The notes beneath the pieces were generated by a model, which was not told the DNA's origin, made no database searches, and saw only the letters and a program-made list of their open reading frames with translations. From Octopus bimaculoides (Eukaryota): a stretch of DNA of 38,035 nucleotides. The stretch covers positions 5,069,240 to 5,107,274 of the forward strand of contig NC_068984.1 of NCBI RefSeq assembly GCF_001194135.2. The letters are read 5' to 3'. The position numbers and the translations under genes were made by a program. This document shows, in pieces, positions 24,691 to 25,853 of the stretch; position 1 is the first letter of the stretch, and the number at the start of each line of letters is the position of its first letter.

Positions 24691-24944
24691 GAAGTTGACA
24701 TCACCGCTCTACTGAGTTTGTTTACTACAACCATTTTGTTCTCTGATGCTTTATCGATCCTACAAATTTACTACCACTTTCTGTAGTAGTAAAATTGTTT
24801 GCCAACATAACATGGCAGTCCTGATTTAGGACGGATGTTACTGTAATTTAGCCCCAAGAGACATCGTCTCCAGCTGACTATACGACACGATCTGTCTCCT
24901 TATATTTTCGAACAAGGGAATCTAGCATCTCCCACTCAGCTCAA

Positions 24945-25005
24945 AACAATATCTGTGTATTGCGATTTCCGGGTTATTTCCCTTCATCAGCACAGAATAA
25001 TTGTT
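24945..25005 (-). ncRNA. Type I hammerhead ribozyme motif (left arm, minus strand)
   Basis: Minus strand: AACAATTAT-TCTGTG-CTGATGA-A-GGG-AAATAA-CCC-G-GAAA-TCGCAAT-A-CACAGA-TATTGTT. Stem III palindrome carries one G>A change. Confidence 0.6.
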
Positions 25006-25154
25006 CAGTCAGAGGTGGCGCTGCTAAATTCCCTTTGAAATATATAGCTTTCAAAGTGATAACTAGTCACTGATCTATCAATTAGAAAATAATAATTTGT
25101 TGCTTTGAAAACTATATATTTCGAACGGGAATTTGGCAACACCACCTCTAGCTG

Positions 25155-25215
25155 AACAATTATTCTGTGCTGATGAAGGGAAATGATCCGGAAATCGCGA
25201 TACACAGATATTGTT
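25155..25215 (+). ncRNA. Type I hammerhead ribozyme motif (right arm, plus strand)
   Basis: Stem I TCTGTG 25164-25169 / CACAGA 25203-25208, extended by AACAAT/ATTGTT; core CTGATGA 25170-25176; short stem II 25178-25189; GAAA 25191-25194; palindromic stem III ATCGCGAT 25194-25201; AUA triplet, predicted cut after 25202. Confidence 0.72.
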
Positions 25216-25853
25216 TTGAGCTGAGTGGGGGGTGCTAGATTCCCTTGTTTGAAAATATAATGACACAGATCGTGTCGCATAGCCAGCTGGAGACGATGTC
25301 TCCTGGGGCTAAATTACAGCAACATTCGTCCTAAACCACGACTGCCATGTTATGTTGGCAAACAATCTTTACTACAAAGTACTGTTGCTGAATATCTCTC
25401 GTGAGATTTAAAAATAAAAATAGCACTTTCTGTAGTGTTGATATATGCAAACAGAGTTTATGATACCAAATCATATTCTTATAATGATTCTCTAAACTCA
25501 AAAATGGAATATCAAAACAACTCTCTCATAAAAATGAATAAAAACGAAAATAGCAATAAAACCAATGAGAAATAATGGAAAACATGATTGGGCTGTGAAG
25601 AAGAAACGAAGAATGCGTCAGCTTCAGCAAAAAAAGTAAAGGGTGACGCAAAAAACAAAGTCTGTTTTTGTTTTTTTTAGATAAAAGGCATCATGGGAGA
25701 ATGGTAGTTATGTTGTTTAGTTTTTGTTTTATTCAGATAGTTTTGGATTCTGGATGATGTCAAAACTGTTTCTCTCCAACGGCTTAAGGAATAAATGTTT
25801 TAAGATGCATCCCGAGAATATTTCGAGAAAAAATGAGTTATGTAGAGAGAAAG

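What the first reader, a model, noticed from the sequence alone, without database searches (positions are those of the whole stretch)
24786..25375. Non-coding 590-bp palindrome carrying a hammerhead ribozyme motif on each strand
Seen: two arms of about 270 bp (about 90% identical) in inverted orientation with a 46-nt spacer and no convincing ORF. Each arm holds a type I hammerhead layout (stem I - CUGAUGA - stem II - GAAA - stem III - AUA - stem I'); the plus-strand one is at 25155-25215 and the minus-strand one at 24945-25005. Stem III is the 8-nt palindrome AUCGCGAU, too short to close intramolecularly. Established: minimal type I hammerheads with palindromic stem III occur in Penelope-like element terminal repeats and cleave as dimers; PLE insertions can carry inverted terminal repeats. 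Inference: this is a non-autonomous PLE-dependent or retrozyme-like family built as a foldback. A transcript from either strand would contain one ribozyme and fold into a hairpin of about 270 bp that masks it, and would be a possible ADAR or siRNA substrate. Two decayed PLEs in the window show such RT partners exist in this genome.
Basis: partly seen in the sequence, partly recalled or inferred. Interest (0 to 1): 0.9.

Follow-up and report, generated by a model that had tools for sequence, protein, structure and literature searches.

The report
Head-to-head retroelement insertion with hammerhead relics
The 590-bp palindrome is real. It is most likely an old, dead double insertion of a short hammerhead-bearing retroelement of the Penelope or retrozyme kind, laid down head to head, which is a known by-product of how such elements integrate and not a new kind of element.

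Summary
The inverted repeat is confirmed: arms of about 270 bp, 91% identical, with a 46-nt spacer. Each arm carries a type I hammerhead-like motif at the stated coordinates.

- **Motif quality:** It is more than chance (0.009 expected per shuffled window). It tops a model built only from four published retrozyme hammerheads (18.3 and 15.4 bits).
- **Motif defects:** No Rfam hammerhead model reaches E<=10. Position 10.1/11.1 is A·G, not G-C. The left copy has lost the palindromic helix III.
A 13-bp direct repeat (24775-24787 and 25424-25436) brackets the whole structure. A 50-nt A-rich tail (25374-25423) sits at one end only. Both copies have their RNA-sense 3' ends facing outward.

This matches the published signature of Penelope-type integration, with an inverted 5'-truncated copy, a one-sided tail, and nicking and extension of both strands. 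Hammerheads 100-700 bp apart on opposite strands were already reported in 2014.

The arms differ by 24 changes, mostly transitions, so the insertion is old. In a transcript the ribozyme is buried in a hairpin of -447 kcal/mol.

No other copy or parent element could be reached, so whether this is a foldback family stays untested. I rate it a new member of a known kind, of low interest.

The parts
24775..24787 (.). Left copy of the 13-bp direct repeat CACTTTCTGTAGT (candidate target-site duplication)
   Evidence: Exact 13/13 match with 25424-25436. Only 4 of 20000 shuffles of the two 101-nt end regions reach 13. It is the only flanking repeat of >=5 bp for any boundary choice.
24788..25056 (-). 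Left copy of the element. Its RNA sense is on the minus strand, with the 3' end at 24788 facing outward.
   Evidence: Aligns as reverse complement to 25103-25373 with 24 differences in 273 columns (18 transitions, 4 transversions, 2 gaps).
24952..24996 (-). Hammerhead-like motif of the left copy. Helix III is decayed to AUCGCAAU. Predicted cleavage after A24958.
   Evidence: Descriptor hit. Best hit of model R1 in the window, 18.3 bits, E about 0.004, full length. The dimer fold does not form an intermolecular helix III.
24916..25033 (-). Internal interrupted hairpin of the left copy, with the hammerhead at its tip
   Evidence: Consensus fold of the two arms, columns 25-142 of alignment A2.
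25057..25102 (.). 46-nt non-palindromic spacer. It is either extra 5' sequence of one copy or filler at the head-to-head junction.
   Evidence: Lies between the inner arms of repeat I2. Only weak self-similarity in the arm alignment. No significant similarity to the tail.
25103..25373 (+). Right copy of the element, the part shared with the left copy. RNA sense is on the plus strand.
   Evidence: T25373 corresponds to A24788.
25127..25244 (+). Internal interrupted hairpin of the right copy. It is an extension of helix I, with the hammerhead core at its tip.
   Evidence: the 38 of the 45 predicted pairs that lie in columns 25-142; none with a compensatory change. The single arm 25057-25423 folds at -106.5 kcal/mol, z = -4.9 against 100 shuffles.
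25164..25208 (+). Hammerhead-like motif of the right copy: UCUGUG CUGAUGA A GGG-AAAUGA-UCC G GAA AUCGCGAU A CACAGA. Predicted cleavage after A25202.
   Evidence: Descriptor hit. Second-best R1 hit, 15.4 bits, E about 0.03. The dimer MFE forms the 8-bp intermolecular helix III, 6.7 kcal/mol better than two monomers. The active monomer fold is -5.2 against an MFE of -13.2 kcal/mol.
25374..25423 (+). One-sided 50-nt tail with an A-rich end (...TTTAAAAATAAAAATAG), present only on the right copy
   Evidence: Sequence between the end of the shared part and the right copy of the 13-bp repeat. It has no counterpart left of 24788.
25424..25436 (.). Right copy of the 13-bp direct repeat CACTTTCTGTAGT

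Best explanation
The region 24788-25423 is one old insertion event of a short, hammerhead-bearing retroelement RNA. The RNA was either a non-LTR retrozyme-like non-autonomous element or the hammerhead-containing terminal region of a Penelope-like element. It was integrated by a Penelope-type reverse transcriptase/GIY-YIG nuclease.

Inferred mechanism:
1. Staggered nicks 13 bp apart left two inward-pointing 3'-OH ends.
2. Both ends were used to prime cDNA on the same kind of RNA. Alternatively, one cDNA snapped back on itself.
3. This gave two copies joined head to head at 25057-25102.
4. Each copy has its RNA-sense 3' end next to one copy of the 13-bp target duplication.
5. Reverse transcription started 50 nt further 3' on the right copy, which left the one-sided tail.

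Since then the two arms have drifted apart by about 9% through neutral change, mostly transitions. The hammerhead-like motifs are relics of the source element's ribozyme. At this locus they almost certainly do nothing. There is only one motif per strand, so no unit can be excised. The left one has lost its palindromic helix III. In any transcript each motif is paired with the antisense of the other inside a hairpin of about 270 bp.

Shown: the repeat, the motif, the flanking duplication, the tail, the orientation and the decay. Inferred: the enzyme, the priming on both strands and the nature of the source RNA.
For: - **Repeat and age:** Inverted repeat and its divergence.
- **Single insertion:** A 13-bp direct repeat encloses the whole palindrome plus tail (4/20000 shuffles; unique candidate).
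- **Orientation:** The left motif is on the minus strand and the right one on the plus strand. Both RNA-sense 3' ends therefore abut the duplication, as expected if both nicked strands prime.
- **Published enzymology:** A purified Penelope-like protein cleaves and extends both top and bottom strands. The tail is the stretch between two reverse-transcription start sites (PMC11167929).
- **Precedent:** Dual hammerheads 100-700 bp apart on opposite strands were reported in Schistosoma. Here the cleavage sites are 244 nt apart (PMC4209133).
- **Motif origin:** The motif is beyond chance. Model R1, built only from published coral, mussel and axolotl retrozyme hammerheads, ranks it first and second in the window.
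- **Retrozyme-like fold:** A single arm is strongly self-paired with the hammerhead free at a hairpin tip, as described for metazoan retrozyme RNAs (PMC7229834).
- **Partner enzymes:** At least one Penelope-like RT/EN remnant lies in the same window, so such enzymes existed in this genome.
- **Not an assembly artefact:** The arms are only 91% identical.
Against: - No parent element or second copy was found, so 'retroelement' rests on the motif and the insertion anatomy alone.
- The arm has no similarity to the Penelope-like remnants in the window.
- The tail is 50 nt, longer than the 30-40 bp described.
- Both copies stop within 46 nt of each other. Independent truncation of a long RNA would rarely do this. 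It needs a short template of about 370 nt, a strong stop, or snap-back.
- The outermost 7-12 nt of the inverted repeat overlap the 13-bp duplication. This can be read as microhomology, but it blurs the boundary.
- The hammerhead is non-canonical (A·G at 10.1/11.1) and Rfam-negative.
- With two sequences there is no covariation evidence.
Confidence: 0.6

Rival explanations
1. The palindrome is itself the transposing unit. It would be a recurrent foldback-type non-autonomous retroelement family, copied as one hairpin RNA with one sense and one antisense ribozyme.
For: The two arms end at nearly the same inner point with a defined 46-nt spacer. One 13-bp duplication encloses the whole. An A-rich 3' end is present on one side only, as expected for a single RNA template.
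Against: No second copy is known. A 270-bp perfect hairpin RNA (-447 kcal/mol) is a poor template for reverse transcription. Head-to-head structures arise routinely at Penelope-type integration without any foldback master copy. The possible microhomology between the target 13-mer and the template just 3' of the left copy's start is expected for independent priming, not for a unit copy.
Confidence: 0.15
2. A single solo retrozyme or Penelope fragment inserted first. Part of it was later duplicated in inverted orientation by a DNA-level event such as replication fork switching or hairpin repair.
For: It would explain the asymmetry (tail on one side only) and the non-palindromic spacer.
Against: The 13-bp repeat flanks the complete palindrome, not one arm. 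A later inverted duplication would have to end exactly at the original 5' junction.
Confidence: 0.08
3. A MITE or foldback DNA transposon whose long terminal inverted repeats happen to contain a hammerhead-like string.
For: Long inverted arms with a short spacer and no coding capacity. Mariner/Tc1 transposase fragments occur in the window.
Against: No duplication abuts symmetric repeat ends; the only flanking repeat is asymmetric and 13 bp. There is a one-sided 50-nt A-rich tail. The hammerhead-like layout is expected 0.009 times per window by chance, and it also has a palindromic helix III and canonical helix sizes.
Confidence: 0.05
4. The hammerhead resemblance is a coincidence inside an unrelated inverted duplication.
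For: No Rfam hammerhead model reaches E<=10. The G10.1-C11.1 pair is absent. The descriptor was relaxed after seeing the motif. R1 scores are modest at 15-18 bits.
Against: 0.009 hits expected per window even with the relaxed descriptor. Several extra features were not required by the descriptor: an 8-nt palindromic helix III, a 6-bp helix I followed by an internal loop and a further helix, and a 6-nt A-rich loop 2. These match published retrozyme hammerheads. The insertion anatomy is independently of the Penelope type.
Confidence: 0.05

Closest known systems
Complex head-to-head insertions of Penelope-like elements: inverted 5'-truncated copy plus a one-sided 30-40-bp tail (Craig et al. 2021, PMC8557442; Frangieh et al. 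2024, PMC11167929)
   Same: Two copies in inverted orientation with 5' ends together and 3' ends outward. An extension at one end only. One duplication around the whole. A hammerhead motif near the terminal region. A Penelope-like RT/EN remnant is present in the same window.
   Different: No RT/EN reading frame is attached and there is no sequence similarity to any Penelope-like element available here. Both copies are very short (about 270-370 nt) and nearly equal in length. The tail is 50 nt, not 30-40.
Dual minimal hammerheads on opposite strands 100-700 bp apart in Schistosoma mansoni (Cervera & de la Pena 2014, PMC4209133)
   Same: Two type I hammerhead motifs on opposite strands, 244 nt between cleavage sites. 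A short palindromic helix III implies action as a dimer. There is an unpaired nucleotide after A9.
   Different: Helix sizes here are canonical (I 6 bp, II about 4, III 2 bp plus a 4-nt loop), unlike the minimal type (long helix II, no helix III). An extra G separates C11.1 from G12, so A and G face each other where G10.1-C11.1 is normally conserved.
Metazoan non-LTR retrozymes (Cervera & de la Pena 2020, PMC7229834; Li, Clavereau & Pollet 2026 preprint, 10.64898/2026.07.22.740005)
   Same: Unit size in the 170-400-nt range, GC below 50% (39.5%), and a duplication longer than 4 bp. A type I hammerhead with canonical helix sizes. A strongly self-paired RNA with the ribozyme free at a helix tip. 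Solo monomers are common in genomes.
   Different: It is not in head-to-tail tandem, so no unit RNA can be excised and no circle formed from this locus. Only one hammerhead lies on each strand, in inverted arrangement. Expression is unknown.
Inverted 5' segments of LINE-1 insertions made by twin priming (my own knowledge: Ostertag & Kazazian 2001)
   Same: Both nicked target strands prime cDNA on one RNA species. This gives an internal inversion inside a single target-site duplication.
   Different: Twin priming inverts a different, upstream part of the RNA, so no palindrome results. Here both arms copy the same region.
MITEs and foldback DNA transposons
   Same: A non-coding palindrome with long inverted arms.
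   Different: No symmetric target duplication at the repeat ends. The tail is asymmetric and A-rich. The content is ribozyme-like.

Membership tests
Hammerhead ribozyme, type I (Rfam Hammerhead_1 and related models) | Conserved core boxes CUGANGA, GAAA and U-H at the junction of three helices, with the ends in helix I | tested here: met
   Both arms: CUGAUGA ... GAAA ... UA, with helix I of 6 bp closing.
Hammerhead ribozyme, type I (Rfam Hammerhead_1 and related models) | G10.1-C11.1 pair directly adjoining A9 and G12 | tested here: not met
   A25177 faces G25190, and the same holds in the left copy. The strict descriptor gives 0 hits. This pair is flagged non-standard in the R1 alignment. The published axolotl Ax353 hammerhead has U/U there, so this is not necessarily fatal.
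Hammerhead ribozyme, type I (Rfam Hammerhead_1 and related models) | Score at or above the Rfam gathering threshold | tested here: not met
   No hammerhead family at gathering on the window, nor at E<=10 on 761 nt or 81 nt. No positive control for minimal or retrozyme hammerheads could be run.
Hammerhead ribozyme, type I (Rfam Hammerhead_1 and related models) | Covariation supporting helices I-III across copies | tested here: inconclusive
   Only two copies exist. 45 predicted pairs, 0 with compensatory change, and 3 with a one-sided change that keeps pairing.
Hammerhead ribozyme, type I (Rfam Hammerhead_1 and related models) | Site-specific self-cleavage | not testable with these tools
   Needs in vitro transcription. 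In silico, the active monomer fold is 8 kcal/mol above the MFE, and the right-arm dimer forms an 8-bp helix III.
Penelope-like element minimal hammerhead (Cervera & de la Pena 2014) | [quoted passage not shown] | tested here: inconclusive
   A25177 can be read as that nucleotide, but it is then matched by an extra G25190 on the other side.
Penelope-like element minimal hammerhead (Cervera & de la Pena 2014) | Palindromic positions 15.2-16.2 and loop 3 | tested here: met
   Right arm AUCGCGAU. The left arm AUCGCAAU differs by one G-to-A change at a CpG.
Penelope-like element minimal hammerhead (Cervera & de la Pena 2014) | Location in the flanking repeat (pLTR) of an element with an RT-GIY-YIG reading frame | tested here: not met
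   No RT/EN frame adjoins the arms. The nearest remnant (21248-22714) is 2 kb away and shares no sequence with the arm.
Penelope-type complex insertion | Inverted 5'-truncated copy abutting another copy head to head | tested here: met
Penelope-type complex insertion | Tail extension of a few tens of bp at one end only | tested here: met
   50 nt at 25374-25423, absent on the left. This is longer than the 30-40 bp quoted.
Penelope-type complex insertion | Sequence identity of the copies to a Penelope-like element family of the same genome | not testable with these tools
Searches of the window, metagenome, viral and prokaryote collections were empty or gave only chance matches.
Metazoan non-LTR retrozyme | Head-to-tail tandem repeats of 150-450 bp, each with one type I hammerhead | tested here: not met
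   No direct repeat of the unit. No terminal redundancy between spacer and tail (668/3000 shuffles score as well).
Metazoan non-LTR retrozyme | Low GC, a duplication longer than 4 bp, and a highly self-paired unit RNA | tested here: met
   GC 39.5% and a 13-bp repeat. Single arm z = -4.9.
Metazoan non-LTR retrozyme | Expression as linear and circular RNA of unit length | not testable with these tools
   No transcriptome data available.
MITE / foldback DNA transposon | Target-site duplication of fixed length directly flanking symmetric terminal inverted repeats | tested here: not met
   Scanning all boundary pairs gives only the asymmetric 13-bp repeat, which lies 50 nt outside the right arm.

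The most novel reading that the evidence does not exclude
The palindrome could be one member of a recurrent foldback retrozyme family. Such a family would be a non-autonomous element, mobilised by Penelope-like enzymes, whose unit is a long hairpin with a sense ribozyme on either strand. Its hammerhead variant (A·G in place of G10.1-C11.1) would still be active as a dimer. Transcripts would be obligate long double-stranded RNA that masks the ribozyme and feeds small-RNA or editing pathways.
Probability: 0.1. Interest if true: 0.55.

Novelty: new member of a known kind. Interest (0 to 1): 0.22.

Why it matters
If the best explanation holds, this is a textbook-quality fossil of Penelope-type integration on both target strands. 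It shows the duplication, two outward-facing 3' ends, a one-sided tail and a junction in the middle. That makes it useful as an annotated example for repeat annotation, because such palindromes confuse assemblers and repeat finders.

It also shows that Rfam models miss this class of hammerhead. Scans for ribozymes in invertebrate genomes that rely on Rfam alone would therefore under-count them.

It does not open a new question. Opposite-strand hammerhead pairs and inverted Penelope insertions are both already described.

Tried and rejected
1. **Rfam on the window, 761 nt and 81 nt:** no hammerhead hit. The strong sub-threshold hits to plant MIR7533, MIR2606 and MIR6288 only reflect a long hairpin and are not membership.
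2. **Protein search with the 102-aa frame across the right arm, hoping for mis-called ORFs in other copies:** nothing.
3. **Exact-pattern scans for the hammerhead and for a conserved arm 25-mer:** metagenome and viral contigs gave nothing. The prokaryote genome scan gave one hit in an Aminicenantes MAG (L002), which on reading is a chance match without helix I.
4. **Locating the window's own contig or relatives through encoded proteins:**
   - The window ORF is not on record.
   - The Penelope-like homologues sit on 2-kb contigs without flanking repeats, and the newt record has no DNA held.
   - Neither R1 nor Rfam finds a hammerhead on L001 or L003, so there is no positive control.
5. **Identifying the organism through a mariner fragment:** best hit 69% identity, so no identification.
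6. **Empty-site paralogue in the window:** none.
7. **Terminal redundancy between spacer and tail, which would indicate a copy longer than one unit from a circular or tandem template:** not significant.
8. **Reading frame downstream of the AUG inside CUGAUGA, as in the anole element:** stops after 21 codons, with no similarity to Penelope N-termini.
9. **Full-text search for the motif strings:** one irrelevant primer match.
10. **Assembly artefact:** rejected because the arms are only 91% identical.
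Full report
**1. The observation**

The inverted repeat is real. The repeat finder gives arms 24791-25036 and 25124-25369 (246 nt, 91% complementary). 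It also gives an inner pair 25026-25056 / 25103-25133 with 46 nt between them. blastn aligns 273 nt at 91.2%, and the arm has no other copy in the 38-kb window.

A gapped alignment of the two halves shows 24 differences in 273 columns: 18 transitions, 4 transversions and 2 single-base gaps. That pattern looks like neutral decay after a duplication. The 9% divergence also excludes an assembly or library artefact.

The only ORF is 91 aa (25005-25280, minus strand). It has no Pfam match and no homologue among 5.8 billion proteins.

**2. The hammerhead-like motif**

The right arm reads, on the plus strand at 25164-25208: UCUGUG CUGAUGA A GGG AAAUGA UCC G GAA AUCGCGAU A CACAGA. The left arm has the same motif on the minus strand (24996-24952).

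Evidence that it is more than chance:
- A descriptor I wrote finds only these two motifs in the window, and nothing else even at helix I >= 4 bp. It requires helix I >= 6 bp, CUGANGA, helix II >= 3 bp with at most one unpaired base on each side, GAAA, U-H, and a return to helix I.
- 1500 dinucleotide shuffles of the window give 0.009 hits per window. The two motifs count as one event because the arms are copies.
- Several features were not required by the descriptor: an 8-nt palindromic helix III, a 6-bp helix I followed by an internal loop and six more pairs, and a 6-nt A-rich loop 2.

- The pair next to the core is A·G, where G10.1-C11.1 is highly conserved. A strict descriptor gives zero hits.
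- No Rfam hammerhead model reports the motif, neither at gathering on the window nor at E<=10 on 761 nt or on 81 nt. The only Rfam hits are plant microRNA hairpin models far below threshold, which simply see a long hairpin.
- The palindrome AUCGCGAU is intact only in the right arm. The left arm reads AUCGCAAU, a G-to-A change at a CpG.

**3. An independent test of the motif**

I took four hammerheads whose self-cleavage was studied experimentally. They come from the supplement of Cervera & de la Pena 2020 (coral Amil224, mussel Mg353, axolotl Ax353 and Ax330). I aligned them, built a covariance model with the textbook structure, and searched the whole window with filters off.

The two arm motifs are the best and second-best hits. 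Both are full length and in the expected register, at 18.3 bits (E about 0.004) and 15.4 bits (E about 0.03). Only the 10.1/11.1 pair is flagged as non-standard. The next hit scores 12.2 bits and lacks the core.

The helix sizes match what that group calls the canonical metazoan type I hammerhead: I 6 bp, II 4 positions, III 2 bp with a 4-nt palindromic loop (PMC4209133). The axolotl Ax353 sequence has U facing U at 10.1/11.1, so a non-G-C pair there occurs in a studied retrozyme hammerhead.

Folding agrees with action as a dimer:
- The active monomer fold costs 8 kcal/mol relative to the MFE.
- Two right-arm copies form the 8-bp intermolecular helix III, 6.7 kcal/mol better than two monomers.
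- The left-arm variant does not form that helix.

**4.

The palindrome sits inside a larger, asymmetric unit.
- The 13-mer CACTTTCTGTAGT occurs at 24775-24787 and again at 25424-25436. Only 4 of 20000 shuffles of the two end regions reach 13.
- It is the only flanking repeat of 5 bp or more for any choice of boundaries.
- Between the end of the shared arm sequence (T25373, which corresponds to A24788) and the right 13-mer lie 50 nt with no counterpart on the left. They end ...TTTAAAAATAAAAATAG.
- The left motif is on the minus strand and the right one on the plus strand. The RNA-sense 3' ends of both copies therefore face outward, each next to one copy of the 13-mer, and the 5' ends meet at the 46-nt spacer.

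**5. Comparison with published Penelope-type integration**

This is the published signature of integration by Penelope-like elements.
- Craig et al. 2021 describe frequent 5' truncation, an inverted 5'-truncated copy immediately adjacent that forms inverted repeats, and a 30-40-bp tail often present at only one end (PMC8557442).
- Frangieh et al. 2024 showed that a purified Penelope-like protein cleaves and extends both top and bottom strands, unlike R2 or LINE-1. They also showed that the tail is the stretch between two alternative reverse-transcription start sites (PMC11167929).
- Staggered nicks 13 bp apart leave two inward-pointing 3'-OH ends. If both prime on the same RNA species, the product is exactly what is seen here.
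- Cervera & de la Pena 2014 already reported dual hammerheads 100-700 bp apart on opposite strands in Schistosoma (PMC4209133). Here the two cleavage sites are 244 nt apart.

**6. The source RNA**

Each arm on its own is strongly structured. The stretch 25057-25423 folds at -106.5 kcal/mol, z = -4.9. The hammerhead core sits at the tip of an interrupted hairpin, 25127-25244, that extends helix I. This resembles the self-paired retrozyme RNAs in which the ribozyme remains free to fold (PMC7229834).

Both copies stop within 46 nt of each other. Independent truncation of a 3-4-kb Penelope RNA would rarely do that. It fits a short template of about 370 nt (the retrozyme size range), a strong stop, or snap-back of one cDNA.

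Against a retrozyme in the strict sense:
- There is no head-to-tail repeat.
- There is no terminal redundancy between spacer and tail.

Against a Penelope flanking repeat:
- No RT/EN frame adjoins the arms.
- The arm shares nothing with the Penelope-like remnant at 21248-22714.

I therefore leave the source as 'hammerhead-bearing, Penelope-mobilised retroelement'. I lean towards a short non-autonomous one.

**7. Function at this locus**

Most likely there is none.
- There is one motif per strand, so no unit can be released.
- The left motif has lost its dimerisation palindrome.
- In a transcript of either strand the motif pairs with the antisense of the other copy in a hairpin of -447 kcal/mol.

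The ADAR/siRNA suggestion is untestable here.

**8. Limits**

- I could not reach the source genome.
- Window-wide blast, a protein search with an arm ORF and exact-pattern scans of metagenome, viral and prokaryote collections gave no related copy. The single prokaryote hit is a chance match.
- Look-ups of encoding contigs gave no related copy either.
- No positive control for Rfam on minimal hammerheads was available.
- The organism was not identified.
With only two sequences there is no covariation evidence.
- The outermost 7-12 nt of the inverted repeat overlap the 13-mer with small gaps. I read this as possible microhomology between the target 3' end and the template, but it could be coincidence.

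**9. Verdict**

The palindrome and the hammerhead-like layout are real and beyond chance, but the motif is non-canonical, Rfam-negative and decayed in one arm.
It is retroelement-derived and related to the Penelope/retrozyme group, but it is more likely a one-off head-to-head insertion product than a foldback family.
- It is a new member of a known kind. Interest is low, at about 0.2.

Noticed in passing
window 21248-22714 (+): Decayed Penelope-like element. RT and GIY-YIG regions are spread over several frames, 43-44% identical to P0001 (tblastn E 5e-69 and 2e-36). There is an apparent internal deletion between the SLYTSVP and RYFDDILL motifs. The reading frame ends near 22720. No hammerhead was found next to it.
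   Followed up: partly
window 32243-32455 (-): Weak match to the C-terminal GIY-YIG part of Penelope-like proteins (P0001 aa 517-589, 34%, E 0.011; P0002 aa 434-476). It lies next to N gaps.
   Followed up: partly
window 15320-15625 (+); also frames at 30306-30509, 33646-33918, 34137-34442 (+): Mariner/Tc1-type transposase fragments. The 15320-15625 piece is up to 69% identical to proteins carrying Pfam PF01359, many of them named SETMAR-like. No near-identical protein is in the database, so the host species is not represented there.
   Followed up: partly
window, 13 runs of N (e.g. 14472-15288, 25948-26798, 30711-31324): 4302 of 38035 bases are N. Overall GC is 32%. There are many (TA)n, (CA)n and tetranucleotide arrays (e.g. 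23900-24030 and 25857-25933, either side of the palindrome). This is a gappy short-read eukaryote draft, so nearby repeat structure may be incomplete.
   Followed up: no
window 24968-25192 (-): The long hairpin gives sub-threshold Rfam hits to plant microRNA precursor models (MIR7533 94 bits against a gathering score of 230, E 1e-19; also MIR2606 and MIR6288). This shows that any long perfect hairpin scores on these models.
   Followed up: yes
window 24775-24790 versus 25370-25384: The target 13-mer (ACTTTCTGT, then AGT AGT) resembles the reverse complement of the start of the right-hand tail (ACTTTGT AGT), with a 2-nt and a 3-nt gap. This may be microhomology used to prime the left copy, or it may be coincidence.
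   Followed up: partly
L002 6016-6041 (-), Aminicenantes MAG JAGLQA010000538.1: An exact match to the pattern CTGATGAAGGG-N-CCGGAAATCG in a bacterial MAG. It has no helix I and no similarity beyond the pattern, so it is judged a chance hit. By my own rough estimate, about one such hit is expected in 596 Gb.
   Followed up: yes
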